Source of the DNA: Selaginella moellendorffii
Lineage: Eukaryota; Plantae; Lycopodiophyta
Assembly: GCF_000143415.4 (NCBI RefSeq)
Contig: NW_003314293.1
Span: 1,618,457 to 1,682,456, forward strand
Length of the DNA: 64,000 nt
Reading direction: 5' to 3'
The notes under the pieces are model-generated. The model saw only the letters and a list, made by a program, of their open reading frames with translations, did no database searches and had not been told where the DNA came from. This document shows positions 5,935 to 58,149 of the stretch, piece by piece (position 1 is the first letter of the stretch; each line of letters starts with the position of its first letter). The translations under genes were made by a program, and so were the position numbers.

Positions 5935-7164
5935 ATGGCAGGACTTTCTCTTCAGTGTGGAGATTGCGGCGCGGCTCTGCGGACCGTGGAAGAGGCGCAG
6001 GAGCACGCGGAGATCTCAGGCCACGCGAATTTCGTGGAATCGACGCAAGCGGTCCTCAATCTGGTATGCACAGCCTGCGGCAAGCCCTGCCGATCGCAGA
6101 CGGAGGTGGATCTCCACACCAAGCGCACTGGCCATGTCGATTTCGCGGACAAGACGGCCGAGGCGGCCAAGCCCGTGGTCCTGGAGAGCGGCAGCAAGCC
6201 CGAGATGATGGACGTGGATCCGAAAGAGGAGATGCAAGCTCCGGAGGTGAACCAGCAGCTCCTCGAGGAGCTGGAAGCGATGGGATTCCCGCGCGCTCGA
6301 TCCGTCCGGAGCTTGTTCTACAGCAAGGCCGAGAACTTGGAAGGCGCCGTGAATTGGATCGTGGAGCACGAGAACGATCCAGATATCGATGAGGAGCTCT
6401 TGGTTCCGGCGAGCTCGCTAAAGCCGGCTCTCACTCCCGAGGAGGCCAAGGCTAAGGCGCAAGAATTGGTGGAGCGAGCACGGAAGAAGAAAGAGGAGGA
6501 GGAGAAGAAGCTGGAGAGGGAGCGAGAGAAGGAGAGGATCCGCGTCGGGAAGGAGCTCCTCGAGGCCAAGCGCAAGGAGGAGGACAGCGAGAGGAAGCGG
6601 ATCCTCATGTACAGGAAGGCGGAGAAGGAGGAGGAGAAGCGCGCGAGAGACAAGATCCGGCAAAAGATCGAGGAGGATCGAGCGGAGAGGCGGCGGAAGC
6701 TGGGCTTGCCGCCGGAAGAACCCAAGCCGGCTGATCAAGCAGCAGCGCCACTCGCAGCTCCAGCGGCAGCTCGTCCAGCAGATGAAACCAAGCCAGTCCA
6801 GCAGCCAAAGGCAGCGTCCAAGGCCGAGGAGCTCCGGAGCTGCCTGAGATCCATCAAGCAATCTCACAAGGATCAGGACGCGAAGGTGAAGAAGGCGTTC
6901 CAGACGCTCCAGACTTACGTGGGGAACATTGGGCGCGCCCCGCAGGAGGAGAAGTTTCGCAAGATCCGGGTGACCAATCCCACGTTCCAGGAGCGCGTCG
7001 GGGATCTCGGCGGCGTCAAGTTTCTGGAGCTGTGCGGCTTCGAGCTGGACCCGAGCGGCGAGTTTTTGAACCTGGCGGCGCAGAGTGTCGACATTGGGGT
7101 GCTGAGAGCTGCAGACAAGGAGCTCTCATCGGCGACCACCAATCCCTTCTTCGGCGTTCTCTAG
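5935..7164 (+). CDS. C2H2-ZnF / UBA / coiled-coil / PUB domain protein (p97-CDC48 adaptor-like)
   Basis: [12 protein letters not shown]...CTACGKPC...HTKRTGH; [15 protein letters not shown]; [31 protein letters not shown]; ends NPFFGVL. Single exon. Confidence 0.9.
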
Positions 7165-49797: not shown

Positions 49798-50950
49798 TTA
49801 TAGGTGTCCTGAGACTAAGGCAAAGATCACAGAATTTACGGGCATACGCATCCAAAGATAAAGCCCCTGCTGAATCTCTAACAGCTGGTTCACGAGATCA
49901 ACCTTTTCAAACTTCTTGACAAATGAAGCATAAAAAACCTTTGTCAAATCAATCCAAGAAGTCGACTTTGGATTAACTTTGATGTAGTTCTTCCACCACG
50001 AATAAGCATGGCCCATAAGCTTCGTCACAAAAAAATTTATCTTCAACTTATCCTTACAAGGATTGTAAGACCAACAAATTTCCCACAATTCCAACCAAAA
50101 ATCAACCTCTTGACTATCACAAATATTTAGTGATGATTTCCATTCCACGATACCATAATCCTTGGCATGCTTGACATACTAATAGTAATCACGAACATGA
50201 GATCGATTTAACCCTTGAGGTCTATGTGAAGCAAGAAATCCTTAATGAGATTGATGGAATCCTTAACTTCCTTTATGTCACTCTGAACCTCAAAAATCTA
50301 GTATCCTTGCCACATAACGACATCATCAAGAGTCTCTTCTACATTGTTATGGCCATCATCACTAATGCCATACTCCTCATCAAGATCAATATCTTGCTCA
50401 CCCGCCATCCCCAAAAGAACATGTTGCTCTGATACCAATGAAATGAACAAAAGATTGAACCCTTGGCCAACCTCCCAACCCATCCCACAGGCCATGAAAT
50501 ATTCTTAAAATATTCTCTGGGTGTCAAAGAGGGCTAGGTGCTAAGTATTCCTAAGGCACTATGCTGCAAAGGAGAGGGAGAGAGCCATTAGGGTTCTGGT
50601 AGGACTGAGGTATTCCCTAATCCATCCTTGCTATGCTTTGAATAGATGTTTCCTGAGAGGGAGATCCAGCAGCCATGGGATGATCCAAGAGGCAGAGAGT
50701 CATGGATTCCAGAGAGGCAGAACTAAAGGGTTTGAGAGGGAGATAGATTTCCTGTCATGGACATGAGAGTGCTTAGATGCAAAGGGAGAGTGATCTCATA
50801 TTCATGTCATTGACATTGAGAGGGAGTGTCAGAGATATACAATCTCCATGACATGAGAGTCTATGTGACATGAGTGCCACATCACTGATCCAGATGTAGG
50901 ATAGTCACGACTATTGATCATGTATATGCATTATGATATATCAAAGTGAG
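49798..50950 (-). mobile_element. LTR retrotransposon 5' end: LTR, tRNA-Met PBS, gag fragment
   Basis: Minus strand ...CA TTGGTATCAGAGC, PBS at 50437-50426. gag-like WLELWE...KLMGHAYSWW. Far end of the LTR approximate. Confidence 0.8.
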
Positions 50951-52288
50951 AGTCATCCACCATTGTTTTGCTTCTGTGTCTTTCATATTTCTTCTTTGTT
51001 TGTTTGGACCTTATGGAGAAGATCCTTGATAAATAGAAAGGGTGCTATTATAATCCAAGTGTGCATATGAAGAACAATTTGATACACTTACATATGCAAA
51101 TAGTCAATGTTATGCATGTGGGGACCTTCGATCACCAGACTACAAAATTAACATTCAAGCTTATGTTACTCACGAGAGAACCAAGAAGCTAAACAATGGG
51201 GTCTACATCAATGAAAATCTAGGTATTGTCAAGTTTGCTGGAAGAAACAGTAGCATCAGTGTGTCCCAAGCCTTCGTCAATACAAGCCATCAGTAAGATC
51301 AAGAAGCAAGTTAGAGGCATCTTGAGAACTCGGGGCTACAAACTATGTGCTGCAATGATCTTGGTGTCTTTCTTTGGTTATATGCTTCTTGCGGGAGTTA
51401 TCCATCGCTATTACATCTTTCCACAAAACCACAACACTTACAAAGCTTTCTCCAAAGGGTTTCATCTCGCTCATGGAATAAGTTGCTGGTATTTTTCCAG
51501 CGTAAGTCGCACTCCATTTTACAAACCAAATATTGATCGACAATATAAAATCCTGCAAGCAAGATCACACATTACAGTTCAAAATTGAGAGGATGAAAGT
51601 ATTTGAGTTTGTGAGCTTGACAAAGTACTCCCACACTTTCCTGCATTGCAAACAAACACTCCCACATTCCTTCCTTCCTTTGGAATGCTCCGGAATAATC
51701 TCTACATAAATCACCGGTTATAGGCCTAATTTCTCTAAGACTGATCAACTCACCTTGAATCTCTGGATGCTTTCCGTACTGAATGCTGGTTGGTTTGAGG
51801 CCAAATTCAGCTGAAATGGAACCCACATATGGCGCATCTACAAGGTCTTTTCCTTTCCACCAGGTCCAAGTGAGAATCCGTGTTCCAGCAAAGAACACAA
51901 CTGAATAAAGTTACCTTTCGTGACAGGACACAAACACTGCCTTTTATAATCCTTGACTTTCTTACAACAGTTGTTTGAGGTATCCGTTTTCATGGCACCA
52001 CAATGATTAACATTTTGAGTTATTTTCAGATGAGCCAAGGCATTGTTAGTTGTACTAGTTGATCAGCAGAAGATTTACATAATGCCAGAACTGTAGTACT
52101 TCGAGTGCTAGTACTTTGAAATATGAATTTGCTAGTTCTTGATTATAACAAGGATTTTTAGATGCTGCATTGCATACTAAAGCTGCTGGACGAAGGCTTG
52201 ACTCCTCAGAGCTTTAAGGGCCGAGGAGAAAGATCGGTTGAAATAAAGCAATGTTTCTTAAGAAAGTTACATTACTTAAATTACTGAT

Positions 52289-53270
52289 TTAAATACTGCT
52301 GAATTTCGGGGGATCACGAGGGAACGATATGTCCGATAGGATATTGCATTTCCCACGCTCCAGTCTCATGTAACCTCCTTCTCCCCAGCTCCTACCCCAC
52401 CAGTTTTTGAGAATCCAATACTCGACCCCATGTTGTGTCCGTCCATAGCCGACTATGAGTACAGGAAGGCTGGCCTTCGAATCAGAGCAGGGGCCTGAAT
52501 ATATGCCCTGCACACGCGCGCAAAGAGTTTGCTATCAAATGCCCACATCCAGGAGACGTAACTTACTCCAGCATATGAATCAAATTCAGAAGCACTACCA
52601 TCAATTCGAGCAATCACCGGCTGCTTTGACACGACCTCTACCAAGAAACTATCACTCGTTCCCGGCACAGTTCCGATTTGAGACATGGAAACATCATTAG
52701 TCTGTAAGGATAAGTTCAAAACGGTCAGTGCGACTTAAAACAACATCATGACATACGAATGGCTTGCAGGAACTTTGAACGCCCGTATACGGGTACTTCG
52801 AGTCAGTAGTAATCCCCTGCAGGCGAATGTAGTTGAACGCATGGTAAGGATCTGCAGTACCCTTCTCATTGCATCCGCTGTTGTATCTGTTGCAATCGAT
52901 CAGTTGCTGTGGTGAGAGCACCACCATCCTTCCGGTTTGTATCGCTTTGAGGCTCTCCACTGCACCTGCTGCTGCAAATGCCCATGACCCACCTGCAAAA
53001 CTTGTGAGTAAGATATTTTCTTATCAAGTGAGTGACAAACAAAACCTTTGCAGCTTTTGCGAAGATCCACATCCCAGACTCTAGAAACAGCTCCAGATTC
53101 CCTCCAGTCGACTGAATTGCTGAAGCTCGCCTCTTGAGACAATGCCTGTAAATTGAACTTGGGGCCCAAGTTTGCATGTTAGCGGGTGCACTGATCAGTA
53201 CCTGGATCCAGATCAACGACATTGTGAAGAAAAGAAGAAAGGAGAGTTGCAGTGGAGAAAAATATGCCAT
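52289..53270 (-). CDS. Secreted papain-fold (C1A) protein without prodomain or catalytic dyad
   Basis: Exons 53270-53202, 53145-53046, 52992-52757, 52701-52567 and 52507-52289 all in phase, 252 aa. SVDWRESGAV, LSPQQLIDC, YPY, YWILKNWWGRSWGEGGYMR. Active site reads CKGGSWAF and ASLPVLIVG. Confidence 0.9.
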
Positions 53271-53353
53271 TTTGATTGTTGTCCGACCTACACAAAAAGT
53301 TCTTCCCATTTGTACCACCCACGTCATTTTCATGATATATGTATTTTACTGGA

Positions 53354-54778
53354 GGCATGCTTCTCTCACTCTTACCTTTTATACTTCATACTTCACGTGG
53401 TTTACAATTAGGCTGTCTTTTCGGAGGTTGACAACAGTGGAGAAAAAGACATTTGCGCGTTTCTCACAACGACTCTAGGTTAGCATATAACAAGCTATGT
53501 ATGTTAATAGACATCCACTGCGTTTCTCATACTCTTACATTTTAAACTATTAAATCCACGTGTAGATGTAGGCTGCTAATAAGTATGAATAAGAGCCCAT
53601 TTCCATATGCATTGTAATCACTTCATTTTCAAAGTCTAGATTAGAGTTAAATGTAGAAACATCAGGTGTAGAGCACGTGGTTTACAATTAGGATTCATAT
53701 ATAAAAAACAAATCCTTACAAGATTCTATCTATTCACATTTTTTTCATCTAACATTAGATGTTTTACTATTTAAATGGTTGGCATTTGAATATAAGATAA
53801 CTTTCTTTCACATTGCAATATAAATCCGGCATGCTTCTCTCACTCTTACCTTTTATACTTCATACTTCAGGTGGTTTACAATTAGGCTGTCTTTTCGGAG
53901 GTTGACAACAGTGGAGAAAAAGACATTTGCGCGTTTCTCACGACGACTCTAGGTTAGCATATAACAAGCTATGTATGTTAATAGACATCCACTGCGTTTC
54001 TCATACTCTTACATTTTAAACTATTAAATCCACGTGTAGATGTAGGCTGCTAATAAGTATGAATAAGAGCCCATTTCCATATGCATTGTAATCACTTCAT
54101 TTTCAAAGTCTAGATTAGAGTTAAATGTAGAAACATCAGGTGTAGAGCACGTGGTTTACAATTAGGATTCATATATAAAAAACAAATCCTTACAAGATTC
54201 TATCTATTCACATTTTTTTCATCTAACATTAGATGTTTTACTATTTAAATGGTTGGCATTTGAATATAAGATAACTTTCTTTCACATTGCAATATAAATC
54301 CGGCATGCTTCTCTCACTCTTACCTTTTATACTTCATACTTCAGGTGGTTTACAATTAGGCTGTCTTTTCGGAGGTTGACAACAGTGGAGAAAAAGACAT
54401 TTGCGCGTTTCTCACGACGACTCTAGGTTAGCATATAACAAGCTATGTATGTTAATAGACATCCACTGCGTTTCTCATACTCTTACATTTTAAACTATTA
54501 AATCCACGTGTAGATGTAGGCTGCTAATAAGTATGAATAAGAGCCCATTTCCATATGCATTGTAATCACTTCATTTTCAAAGTCTAGATTAGAGTTAAAT
54601 GTAGAAACATCAGGTGTAGAGCACGTGGTTTACAATTAGGATTCATATATAAAAAACAAATCCTTACAAGATTCTATCTATTCACATTTTTTTTTCATCT
54701 AACATTAGATGTTTTACTATTTAAATGGTTGGCATTTGAATATAAGATAACTTTCTTTCACATTGCAATATAAATCCG
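53354..54778 (+). repeat. 474 bp tandem repeat, 3 copies
   Basis: Units start GGCATGCTTCTCTCACTC at 53354, 53828 and 54302. Almost identical, each with CACGTG motifs. Confidence 0.97.
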
Positions 54779-54798
54779 CGTACACCAGACTGAGGAGC

Positions 54799-55939
54799 AT
54801 GGGACTTAATTTACCTCATTTAGCAATGGCTAAATGGCTACTACTTTTCTTTGTCTTGGTATTGTTCTTCCGATGCATTTTGGGCAATGATTGAATTGTT
54901 TCATTGTGATGAAGGTTTTTGGTGCAAACGGAAAAAGATCCCCATTGTATGGTGGAACCGATGGGGAAAATTTCAGTGACGGTCAGTCTCAGGGTATTGT
55001 GAGAGTCAAGATCTGGTCTGGGTATATTGTGGATGGGATACAGGTTCAATCAGATCAAGGGGGAGAACATGTTTGGTCTGATCCTCATGGCACTTCAAAG
55101 GGGGAAGCCAAAGAGGTAGCTATTTGTAATGCTCATCTTCTCCTAAGATTTCTTTCAGGTGGTTTTAGCTTATCCGGATGAATACATCTACAAGATTTCA
55201 GGGCGCACTGGACCAAATCCATGGACTTCTAATGGCTTGAGTAGGCTTTACTTGCACGTCAACAATAGAAGGACCAATGCCCAAACTACCTTTGGCCCAT
55301 TTGGTACCCACGACTACTCCAATCAGACTACATTTGATTCCCCAGAAGGGACAGTGGTTGGATTTTTTGGTTATGCCTCTTCAACAACATACTTCCGAGG
55401 AATTGGCGTCTATTTCCAAGATCCTTGTGACTGTCCAACACCATCACCACCGCCTTCTCCACCTCCACAACCGCTGCCATCACCCCGAAGACCTTGCAAA
55501 GGCTATCAATGGAGCACAACTGGAAGTAGTTGTTGTTGCGTGGAACGCGAATCTAAGAAGCACACATGCTGTCAATCATCAACTCGAGAGTGCCCGCCCT
55601 TGAGATATGGCGAAGCTCTTCCACCAGCATCCCCAGTACGATATCCGCCACCCAGATTNNNNNNNNNNNNNNNNNNNNNNNNNNNNNNNNNNNNNNNNNN
55701 NNNNNNNNNNNNNNNNNNNNNNNNNNNNNNNNNNNNNNNNNNNNNNNNNNNNNNNNNNTTCACCACGGCCACAACCGACATTGGGAAGATGTCCAAGGTT
55801 TGATAGGTATTGCCAAAGTAAGTCTGGGCGGAAGTTTTGTTGCTGCGTGCCAAATAGCACTGGAAAATGTGGATCCACCCGGACGTGCTGCTGTGATTCT
55901 TGTAGCCCACGGAAGAATTGTGCCCAGTGTTGGGCTTAG
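54799..55939 (+). CDS. Secreted jacalin-related lectin with Pro-rich linker and Cys-rich modules (gap inside)
   Basis: Exons 54799-54858, 54915-55115 and 55159-55939. Signal peptide, PLYGG.DG, SGYIVDGIQV, PDEYIYKISG, TFGPFG, VVGFFG, then PSPPPSPPP and two CCC...CC modules. The frame after the gap is inferred. Confidence 0.85.
55659..55758. other. Assembly gap (100 N)
   Basis: Run of N inside the lectin's second Pro-rich linker. Confidence 1.
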
Positions 55940-58149
55940 AGGATGTAATCAGAAAATATTATGAACTTAATATGAATTTATTATAAAATAAATATAAATA
56001 ATAATTCCAAAAATAGACTGAAAGAAGAAAAAAATATAATATTTTTTGGACAACTTTAGTAATGGCAAAAACTAGCTAAAAATAGATGATTTTGTTTGCT
56101 TAAAAAGACTAGATGTTCTAAGATATTCTACTTAATGGTTGTTATTCATTTGGATTAATTTTATTTTTTTAATTTATAAACTTTTTGGTTTGCTTAAGCA
56201 AACCTGTAAAGGGATGGTAGTGGAAGGATATTCTATCATCTAAGGGTTGTTATTCATTTAGATTAATCGCTTCCCGGCAATCCGTCCACTCCACTCTTGG
56301 ATTTCGTCTTGGCCACCACAGCACAAGGAAGAAAAGCTTCCTATATTTATAATTTATAAACATTCCTAAACACTTCCTAGTATATTCTAGTTTATTTTAC
56401 CATCTAATGGTTGGTATTCAGTAAGATTAATCTTGTGTTTATAAATTATAAACATGTATATAGCTATAAACTTCCATTTGATCAATTAGATTAATAAATA
56501 TAAATAACAGATAAATATACCATGATATATATATATTTTTGTTATCACTTCCAGGATTTTCCATTTAAAGAAGTAAGTGAAGTGGCAAAATTTGCAATAT
56601 TACCATTTCTTTTGATGCAATAAATGGTCATTAGTGCCAGTTTACTAATTTTTGTTTTGGTGGGAGGATATTCTAGGTGAATATCCTCCTCTCACTTTGC
56701 TTTGTTTGCTTCATTGAACAAAAAGGACTACCCTAGTTGTCCTTTATATATGGTTCCGTACCTCCTAGGAAAAACAAATCCCTTATGAAAAAGTTGCTGG
56801 AAAGAAGAAACTGCCAAGAAACTCTAGAAAGACATCTCAACCAAAAAATGGTTGACAAACAATGTTCTGAGACAGATTTCAAGACCAAACTCCAGGCAAA
56901 GATGAGTAGGAAACAAATTCATATTTCCATCAATCGCTTGGATCACTTGCGTCTTGGCAGATTGCCTGTCCCGGTAGTACACAACACAAGGATCTTGCTT
57001 GTGCACAACAATCCCCAAAGCAACCTTTGCCCTGCCTCACTTGCTAACCAGCACCTCCATATCATTGAAAACACAAAAAGATGGAAAAGTCTCGAAATAT
57101 CTAGACAGAAGTAATGGCCTGTCTGGACTGAATAAGGCATCCAACTGACCAACCCGTACTTTGTACCTCCCTGTGCTTTCAATGTAGTTAAAACAAGTAT
57201 CAAAGATACATAAAAGCAAGAACCATATGAGGCAGGCTGAAACAACATAATGCAATTGAAGAATGCATAGCAATTTGATCAAAGAAATTCTGTCTCATGA
57301 CACTGAATGAATAACCCTGCTTAAAGGAAAGAAACTTATCTCGTAAGAGAATCATAGTGTGGACATTCCTGTAATCCACCACATGAATAACATTTCCCAG
57401 GATAGTTGCGAAATGCTGTGCTCCCAACACAATATTGGACCTCTTCATTGCTAAACTGCAAAGTTGAAAAACACATCATGCATAAGTGTTAAAGATTGGA
57501 CAAAAAAAGAAACACCAAATACCAAATGTAGGGAAACAAGAAGGAACCAATTTAGAGAAAATACCTCTTGACATGATTACCACTGATCAGATTTGGCAGT
57601 TTTGAACCTGTAAGCTCTGCAAGCCAGTAGGAGTTTGTCCATGCACTCTTAAAGACTTGATACAGGGAGGTTGAAACTTCACTCTATGGTGCAAAGCATG
57701 AAGGCACCAAACAACACACATGGGGGGGGAGTTTTCACCTCATTGCTGTGCATGCATAAGAGCAGTGTGATATTGTTGAATCTGAATACAAACAGCTGCA
57801 ATATCTAGATCCTCATCCAACTGATCTGTGGAATTGGTGTGAAGATCCTGTGATGTCCTAATAATTGTAGTGGGATCTGCTTCCTAGAAGGAGATCTGGT
57901 AGGAGGTAAACAATGTTGTATGGGGAGAATTGCTTCCAAACTATACACCAATTGGAATGGAGGGAGCTTCCCTATTGTCTTATATATCCATATGGTAATA
58001 GGGTTGGCTAGGCATGGGAATTATCTTGAATAACCTTCTAGAAGATTGTCTTGCGTGACTTTTCGTAACCTCAACCTGGCCATTCCTTTGAGGCTAGTAA
58101 GAACTCAACTTAAGATGAGAAATCCCAAGTGTTGTTGTGAGGTTAGTAA

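What the first reader, a model, noticed from the sequence alone, without database searches (positions are those of the whole stretch)
52289..53270. Intact papain-like gene lacking the I29 prodomain and with Cys25>Ser, His159>Leu, Gln19>Val
Seen: five exons splice in phase (69+100+236+135+219 nt, 252 aa, no stops). The signal peptide joins almost directly to the mature domain (QALS-QEASFSNSVDWR). CGSCWAF reads CKGGSWAF, LNHAV reads ASLPV, KDQ reads WDV (papain numbering by my alignment), while Asn175 and most structural Cys/Trp remain. Losing both the catalytic residues and the inhibitory prodomain while keeping the ORF suggests a selected non-peptidase function (inference), unlike the frameshifted relics nearby.
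Basis: partly seen in the sequence, partly recalled or inferred. Interest (0 to 1): 0.75.

Follow-up and report, generated by a model that had tools for sequence, protein, structure and literature searches.

The report
Spikemoss dead papain without prodomain
This spikemoss (Selaginella moellendorffii) gene encodes a probably secreted protein that keeps the papain protease fold but has lost its cutting residues and its prodomain, so it most likely binds something rather than cuts; databases currently name it as an enzyme.

Summary
A five-exon minus-strand gene (53270-52289) splices in frame to 252 aa. It is identical to RefSeq XP_024537667.1, "ervatamin-B isoform X2", of Selaginella moellendorffii. 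It is a full papain-fold domain (PF00112, E=2e-50; AF2 pLDDT 88, TM 0.93 to ervatamin C). Ser replaces Cys25, Leu replaces His159, there is no Gln19, and the Gly65-Gly66 motif is disrupted. There is no I29 prodomain, and no prodomain remnant anywhere in the window.

All six disulfide cysteines, Asn175 and the tryptophans remain. Losses hit 6 of 10 active-site columns but only 6 of 51 other conserved columns (p=0.002). The lineage has a very long branch (about 2 changes per site) with an intact ORF. Both argue for long-term selection on a non-catalytic fold.

Recent evidence is weaker. The assembly holds three intact copies, each head-to-head with a jacalin lectin gene. Their dN/dS is 0.36-0.47 between paralogues and 6N:1S between probable alleles. 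Neither differs clearly from neutrality.

I found no orthologue outside the species and could obtain no expression data. The scan had already flagged this dead-papain family on other DNA of this genome.

Verdict: real, probably functional pseudoprotease; ligand unknown.

The parts
53202..53270 (-). Exon 1: start codon and 23 residues with a signal-peptide-like hydrophobic core
   Evidence: Translation. Kyte-Doolittle mean reaches 2.36 over residues 4-22, and Ala-Leu-Ser precedes the likely cleavage point. AF2 models residues 6-26 as a helix.
53146..53201 (-). Intron 1 (56 nt, GT..AG). RefSeq isoform X1 uses an acceptor 12 nt upstream (exon 2 then starts at 53157), which adds four residues (FNLQ).
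53046..53145 (-). Exon 2: mature N-terminus (SVDWR...). Val49 (53068-53070) sits at the Gln19 column and is followed by a 3-residue insertion.
52757..52992 (-). Exon 3: Ser59 (52985-52987) at the Cys25 position, the central helix, Cys56/Cys63/Cys95 equivalents, and the disrupted Gly65-Gly66 motif (CNEKGTAD).
52567..52701 (-). Exon 4: start of the R-domain
52289..52507 (-). Exon 5: Leu194 (52466-52468) at the His159 position, Asn215 (52403-52405) equivalent to Asn175, and the stop codon at 52289-52291.
53331..53333 (-). Upstream in-frame ATG, 21 codons before the annotated start and conserved in all three copies. If used, it lengthens the N-terminal region of the signal peptide.
53376..53399 (-). 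TATAAAAG (53383-53376) and CACGTG (53399-53394) upstream of the gene, inside the first unit of the tandem repeat.
   Evidence: Read directly. Function not tested.
53354..54778 (.). Three 474-nt tandem units (99-100% identical) that fill the intergenic space up to the divergent lectin gene.
   Evidence: Copy number differs in L001 and L002.
54763..55990 (+). Divergently transcribed neighbour: a jacalin-like lectin with a Pro-rich linker and Cys-rich tail. It is interrupted by an assembly gap at 55659-55758.

Best explanation
This is a real, intact gene for a secreted papain-fold pseudoprotease of Selaginella moellendorffii. It descends from a plant papain-like cysteine protease (PLCP). It has lost the nucleophile (Cys25 to Ser), the general base (His159 to Leu), the oxyanion Gln19 and the Gly65-Gly66 substrate-backbone clamp. 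It also has insertions next to the old active site and has lost the whole I29 prodomain. Without His159 the Ser cannot be activated, so it cannot cut by the papain mechanism (inference from the established C1A mechanism). The disulfide-stabilised two-lobe fold has been kept. The protein therefore most likely works outside the cell as a binding protein that uses the remodelled cleft or surface. The ligand is unknown. It could be the product of the neighbouring jacalin-lectin gene or a protease inhibitor, but both are speculation. The gene was duplicated as a two-gene module together with the lectin gene. Shown here: gene structure, fold, residue losses, copies and the pattern of conservation. 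Inferred: secretion, lack of activity and binding function.
For: The model equals RefSeq XP_024537667.1, and a second isoform is annotated. PF00112 matches at E=2e-50 over the whole domain with no I29. No I29 remnant is found with 55 prodomain queries against the window and the flanks of the copies. AF2 gives pLDDT 88.4, and Foldseek gives TM 0.93-0.94 and rmsd 1.3-1.8 A to ervatamin C. P0180 keeps 49 of the 61 mature-domain columns that are conserved in 51 active PLCPs. Changes fall in 6 of 10 active-site columns and 6 of 51 others, Fisher p=0.002. All 6 Cys are kept. The branch to this lineage is 1.9-2.0 changes per site with the ORF intact. Three intact copies exist, and the paralogue omega is 0.36-0.47. 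Intron positions and phases are shared with another S. moellendorffii PLCP-derived gene, so this is an old spliced gene and not a retrocopy. The N-terminus has a hydrophobic core and an Ala-x-Ser cleavage motif.
Against: Recent constraint is weak. Over the three copies there are about 15 nonsynonymous and 8 synonymous changes (omega about 0.5, not significantly below 1). The probable alleles differ by 6N:1S. dN is about equal to intron divergence. L001 has a 4-bp deletion that shifts the last two codons. No relative above 47% identity exists outside this species in collections of 5.8 and 1.84 billion proteins. No transcript or protein evidence could be obtained here: the protein was seen only on the genome contig. 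No signal-peptide predictor was available. Papain-family enzymes normally need the prodomain to fold (established knowledge), so folding of this protein is not assured.
Confidence: 0.6

Rival explanations
1. The ORFs are intact but the gene family now drifts neutrally. It is a formerly functional pseudoenzyme, or a gene fragment duplicated along with the lectin gene, and it is now on its way to becoming a pseudogene. Gene conversion, not selection, keeps the three copies alike.
For: W versus L001 shows 6N:1S (omega 1.74) plus a 4-bp deletion before the stop in L001. dN (0.017-0.022) is about equal to intron divergence (0.023-0.027). Introns and UTRs are as similar as exons, while the flanks are only 74-91% identical, which fits gene conversion. 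No orthologue was found outside the species. No transcript evidence was obtained.
Against: The ORF is intact in all three copies after a very long branch. Structural positions are spared while active-site positions are lost (p=0.002). Paralogue omega is 0.36-0.47, with p=0.03-0.06 against neutrality. RefSeq models two isoforms, and that pipeline normally does so only with transcript support (my knowledge, not checked).
Confidence: 0.25
2. The gene model is incomplete. An unrecognised upstream exon supplies a prodomain, or an alternative splice restores the catalytic residues.
For: An in-frame ATG lies 21 codons upstream. Splice choice at intron 1 is variable, giving isoforms X1 and X2.
Against: tblastn with 55 I29 prodomains finds nothing in the 64-kb window or in the 6-kb flanks of the other copies. 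The divergent lectin gene starts 1.5 kb upstream, and the space between is a tandem repeat. Ser59 and Leu194 lie inside exons, with no alternative codon available. All three loci give the same model.
Confidence: 0.04
3. The protein is still a hydrolase and uses Ser59 as its nucleophile, as in serine-type papain homologues.
For: Ser occupies the Cys25 position, as in silicatein and SERA5 (PMC5500368). Asn175 is kept.
Against: His159 is Leu, Gln19 is absent and Gly65-Gly66 is disrupted. No general base or oxyanion hole is left. Silicatein and SERA5 keep the His.
Confidence: 0.03

Closest known systems
Active plant papain-like cysteine proteases (C1A): ervatamin B/C, and RD21/XBCP3- and SAG12/CEP-type enzymes
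   Same: Same fold (TM 0.93, rmsd 1.3-1.9 A), 36-45% identity, the same three disulfides, Asn175 and Trp177, secretory N-terminus, and shared intron positions.
   Different: This protein has no I29 prodomain, no Cys25, His159 or Gln19, a disrupted Gly65-Gly66 motif, insertions beside the active site, and no granulin tail.
S. moellendorffii XP_024545824.1 / XP_024545719.1 ('zingipain-2', P0053/P0188)
   Same: Closest relative at 44-47% identity. It is also dead (Val at Gln19, Gly at Cys25, Thr at His159) and has the same one-residue insertion before position 25. Introns match at the same codons.
   Different: It keeps the I29 prodomain. It shows clearer purifying selection (omega 0.30, with introns 6% diverged). 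A sister relationship appears only when the active-site columns are included (91/87). Without those columns it is unresolved (p-AU 0.42).
Plasmodium SERA5 and sponge silicatein (papain homologues with Ser at the nucleophile position)
   Same: Papain fold with Cys25 replaced by Ser. SERA5 acts non-catalytically (PMC5500368). Silicatein alpha is among the structural matches.
   Different: Both keep His159 and Asn175 and are made with pro-regions. Their lineages and biology are unrelated. Here the His is lost as well.
Prodomain-less dead papains elsewhere: Podila verticillata MVEG_12081 (P0304, 248 aa) and an intronless gene in Logan runs DRR493894/DRR493891 (P0086, 248 aa)
   Same: Same architecture: a short hydrophobic N-terminus joined directly to a papain domain that lacks Cys25 and His159.
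   Different: Only 36-41% identical and on separate long branches, so the losses were probably independent. The source organism of P0086 is unknown.

Membership tests
Papain family fold (Pfam PF00112, MEROPS family C1, subfamily C1A) | Significant full-length match to the Peptidase_C1 profile | tested here: met
   E=2e-50, 172 bits, profile positions 3-219 of 220. Exon-wise matches at E=7e-18 and 2e-16.
Papain family fold (Pfam PF00112, MEROPS family C1, subfamily C1A) | Two-lobe papain fold with three conserved disulfides | tested here: met
   AF2 pLDDT 88.4. Foldseek TMt 0.93-0.94 to 2pns and 1o0e. Six Cys sit at the conserved columns.
Active C1A cysteine peptidase | Catalytic dyad Cys25 and His159 | tested here: not met
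   Ser59 and Leu194 occupy those columns.
Active C1A cysteine peptidase | Oxyanion-hole Gln19 and Asn175 | tested here: not met
   No Gln is present: Val or Arg falls at that column depending on the alignment. Asn175 is kept.
Active C1A cysteine peptidase | N-terminal I29 inhibitory and folding prodomain | tested here: not met
   No PF08246 match. No remnant in the genomic DNA.
Non-peptidase homologue of C1A (pseudoprotease) | Clear homology with catalytic residues replaced and an intact reading frame | tested here: met
Non-peptidase homologue of C1A (pseudoprotease) | Maintained by selection and expressed | tested here: inconclusive
   The deep conservation pattern favours selection (p=0.002). 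Recent omega is 0.36-1.74. Expression is not testable with these tools.
Secreted protein | Cleavable N-terminal signal peptide | tested here: inconclusive
   A hydrophobic core and an Ala-x-Ser motif are present, but no dedicated predictor was available.

The most novel reading that the evidence does not exclude
Selaginella carries a lineage-specific family of secreted papain-fold proteins that fold without a prodomain and have become extracellular binding proteins. This member would work as a pair with the divergently transcribed jacalin / Pro-rich / Cys-rich lectin with which it was co-duplicated. It could, for example, act as a defence sensor, or as a sink for pathogen-made protease inhibitors. 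Repeated amino-acid changes at a few surface codons (92 and 115 differ in all three copies) would then reflect diversifying selection.
Probability: 0.15. Interest if true: 0.65.

Novelty: new variant of a known kind. Interest (0 to 1): 0.4.

Why it matters
Catalytically dead papain homologues are known in animals and parasites but are hardly described in plants. This one also lacks the prodomain that papain-type enzymes normally need both to fold and to stay latent. If it is expressed and folded, it gives a simple test case for how a papain fold can fold on its own and be re-used for binding. There is also a practical point: public databases name it "ervatamin-B", which implies an active protease, so the annotation is misleading. 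Set against this, pseudoproteases are common across protease families, the ligand is unknown, and evidence for present-day selection is modest.

Tried and rejected
1. A word search with exon 5 alone found one unrelated fragment, so exon-level relatives from other Selaginella species are absent from that collection.
2. Literature searches for the locus tags and accessions, and for plant or lycophyte dead PLCPs, found nothing specific.
3. I looked for the other 'dead papains' that earlier scan notes report in this genome. Only the P0053/P0188 lineage came up in my searches. The LamG- and granulin-linked members could not be fetched.
4. A shared dead ancestor with P0053 is supported with the active-site columns included (91/87). 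It is lost when those columns are removed and is not rejected by the AU test (p=0.42). I do not rely on it.
5. Hypervariable codons: two codons differ in all three copies. With about 27 changes over 252 codons, about 1.4 doubly hit codons are expected by chance (my arithmetic). This is not significant.
6. A transposon-capture origin: no inverted repeats flank the duplicated module.
7. Pfam does not recognise a granulin domain in the neighbour's Cys-rich tail.

Full report
**Observation**

The gene lies on the minus strand. I read the sequence and translated each proposed exon by reference. A script that reads window.fa confirmed the following:
- The exons are 53270-53202, 53145-53046, 52992-52757, 52701-52567 and 52507-52289.
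- They total 759 nt and give 252 codons plus a TAA stop, with no internal stop.
- The four introns are all GT..AG and are 56, 53, 55 and 59 nt long.

I never sent a typed or joined model to a search tool. The exons were joined only inside scripts, to check the reading frame and to compare with database records.

The exon-3 search returned a database protein, and its cluster contains P0180 (RefSeq XP_024537667.1, "ervatamin-B isoform X2", Selaginella moellendorffii). P0180 is identical to the joined model. All later whole-protein work used that record. Isoform X1 (P0002, 256 aa) uses an acceptor 12 nt upstream in intron 1.

**What it is**

- Pfam matches Peptidase_C1 over the whole domain (E=2e-50) and finds no I29 prodomain.
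- HMMER alignments to solved structures place Ser59 on Cys25 and Leu194 on His159.
- Gln19 is absent. Pairwise HMMER puts Arg there, because a 3-residue insertion follows.
- A further residue is inserted between Cys22 and position 25.
- The Gly65-Gly66 motif reads CNEKGTAD. Alignments differ on whether one Gly survives.
- An AlphaFold2 model built on a 62-sequence alignment has pLDDT 88.4. It superposes on ervatamin C at TM 0.93-0.94 and rmsd 1.3-1.8 A.
- tblastn with 55 prodomains from homologues finds no I29 remnant, either in the window or in the 6-kb flanks of the other copies. No other papain-like sequence exists in the window.
- The N-terminus has a hydrophobic core (residues 4-22) followed by Ala-Leu-Ser. 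The mature part has exactly six Cys and no N-glycosylation sequon.
- An in-frame ATG 21 codons upstream (53333) is conserved in all copies. If used, it would lengthen the N-terminal region of the signal peptide.

**Copies and context**

The assembly holds three loci.
- L001 (GL377610) is collinear with the window over 14 kb at 91-97% identity, apart from a 1.8-kb inversion. It is probably the other haplotype.
- L002 (GL377578) shares only about 4.7 kb with the window. That stretch covers the dead papain gene and the divergently transcribed jacalin-lectin gene, so the two genes were duplicated as a unit.
- All three copies keep the ORF and the Ser, Leu and Val replacements.
- L001 has a 4-bp deletion just before the stop, which extends the protein to 271 aa.

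**Selection, recent timescale (Nei-Gojobori)**

| Comparison | Result |
|---|---|
| Window vs L001 | 6 N : 1 S, omega 1.74 |
| Window vs L002 | omega 0.47 (p=0.06) |
| L001 vs L002 | omega 0.36 (p=0.03) |

Intron divergence is 0.005-0.027, so dN between paralogues is about as high as intron divergence. The whole transcription unit is far more similar between copies (97-98%) than its flanks are (74-91%), which fits gene conversion. Recent constraint is therefore weak or unproven.

**Selection, deep timescale**

- Of the 61 mature-domain columns that are at least 85% conserved in 51 active homologues, P0180 keeps 49.
- Changes fall in 6 of 10 active-site or substrate-binding columns but in only 6 of 51 others, and the latter are mostly conservative. 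Fisher p=0.002.
- In both trees the lineage sits on a branch of 1.9-2.0 changes per site, several times the median. The frame, the splice sites and all disulfide Cys are still intact.
- A sequence drifting freely for that long would have collected many stop codons and frameshifts (inference).

This is the main argument that the fold has been under selection since, or during, the loss of catalysis.

**Relatives**

- Nothing above 47% identity exists outside this species in the two large protein collections.
- The closest relative is another S. moellendorffii gene pair, P0053/P0188. It is also dead (Val, Gly and Thr at the three key columns) but keeps I29. Its omega is 0.30, with introns 6% diverged.
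- Two of our three mature-domain introns sit at exactly the same codon and phase as in P0053. P0053 has no counterpart of our intron 1, because its first exon carries the signal peptide, the prodomain and the mature N-terminus. The prodomain-coding part was therefore lost from within, or together with, the first exon.
- The two dead lineages are sisters when all columns are used (91/87). They are not sisters when the active-site columns are dropped, and the AU test does not decide (p=0.42).
- Among active enzymes, the gene groups with angiosperm PLCPs of the RD21/XBCP3 or SAG12/CEP types. Support for either placement is weak.
- Prodomain-less dead papains also occur in a Mortierella-like fungus (P0304) and in an unidentified organism (P0086). 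The architecture has therefore arisen more than once.

**Mechanism**

With Leu at His159 there is no general base to activate Ser59. With Gln19 and the Gly-Gly clamp gone, the canonical catalytic and substrate-binding machinery is dismantled, so the protein should be inactive. This is an inference from the established C1A mechanism. The most likely role is extracellular binding.

I cannot say what it binds. The pairing with the lectin gene comes from a single duplicated block, so it is not independent evidence of partnership.

**Earlier notes of this scan**

Earlier notes supplied the species name, which I confirmed. They also report several other dead, prodomain-less papains in this genome. 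I could confirm only the P0053 lineage and the two sister copies of this gene.

**Literature**

Searches found no description of this gene or of such plant proteins.

Noticed in passing
window 53354-54778: Three 474-nt tandem units, 99-100% identical, fill the space between the dead papain gene and the divergent lectin gene. Each unit carries a CACGTG motif. L001 has about two units and L002 has one, so the shared promoter region varies in copy number.
   Followed up: partly
window 54763-55990 (+); L002 4026-5217 (-): The neighbour gene encodes a signal peptide, a jacalin-like domain (PF01419), long Pro-rich extensin-like stretches and two Cys-rich blocks. Pfam does not call the Cys-rich blocks granulin. 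In the window the gene is broken by an assembly gap of 100 N at 55659-55758.
   Followed up: partly
window 50273-52065 vs L001 7190-8973: A 1.8-kb segment immediately downstream of the gene is inverted between the window and the probable other haplotype.
   Followed up: no
L001 about 6990-7036: The L001 copy has a 4-bp deletion two codons before the stop. It shifts the frame and extends the protein by 19 residues (271 aa, XP_024541519.1).
   Followed up: yes
L008 4001-5359 and L009 3001-4369 (GL377567.1): A second dead papain lineage of S. moellendorffii ('zingipain-2') keeps the I29 prodomain but has Val, Gly and Thr at the Gln19, Cys25 and His159 columns. Its two copies lie 0.9 Mb apart on one scaffold with the same neighbours (PP2C, Mad3/BUB1, ATG13). 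Their omega is 0.30.
   Followed up: partly
L006 4001-4747; L007 888-1634 (Logan DRR493894, DRR493891): An intronless 248-aa gene from an unidentified organism encodes a hydrophobic N-terminus joined directly to a papain domain with Val, Ser and Ala at the three key columns. It has the same architecture as this gene but is only about 38% identical.
   Followed up: no
window codons 92 (52886-52888) and 115 (52817-52819): These two codons encode a different amino acid in each of the three copies (R/T/E and Q/H/R). This is suggestive of diversifying selection but is not significant with three sequences.
   Followed up: partly
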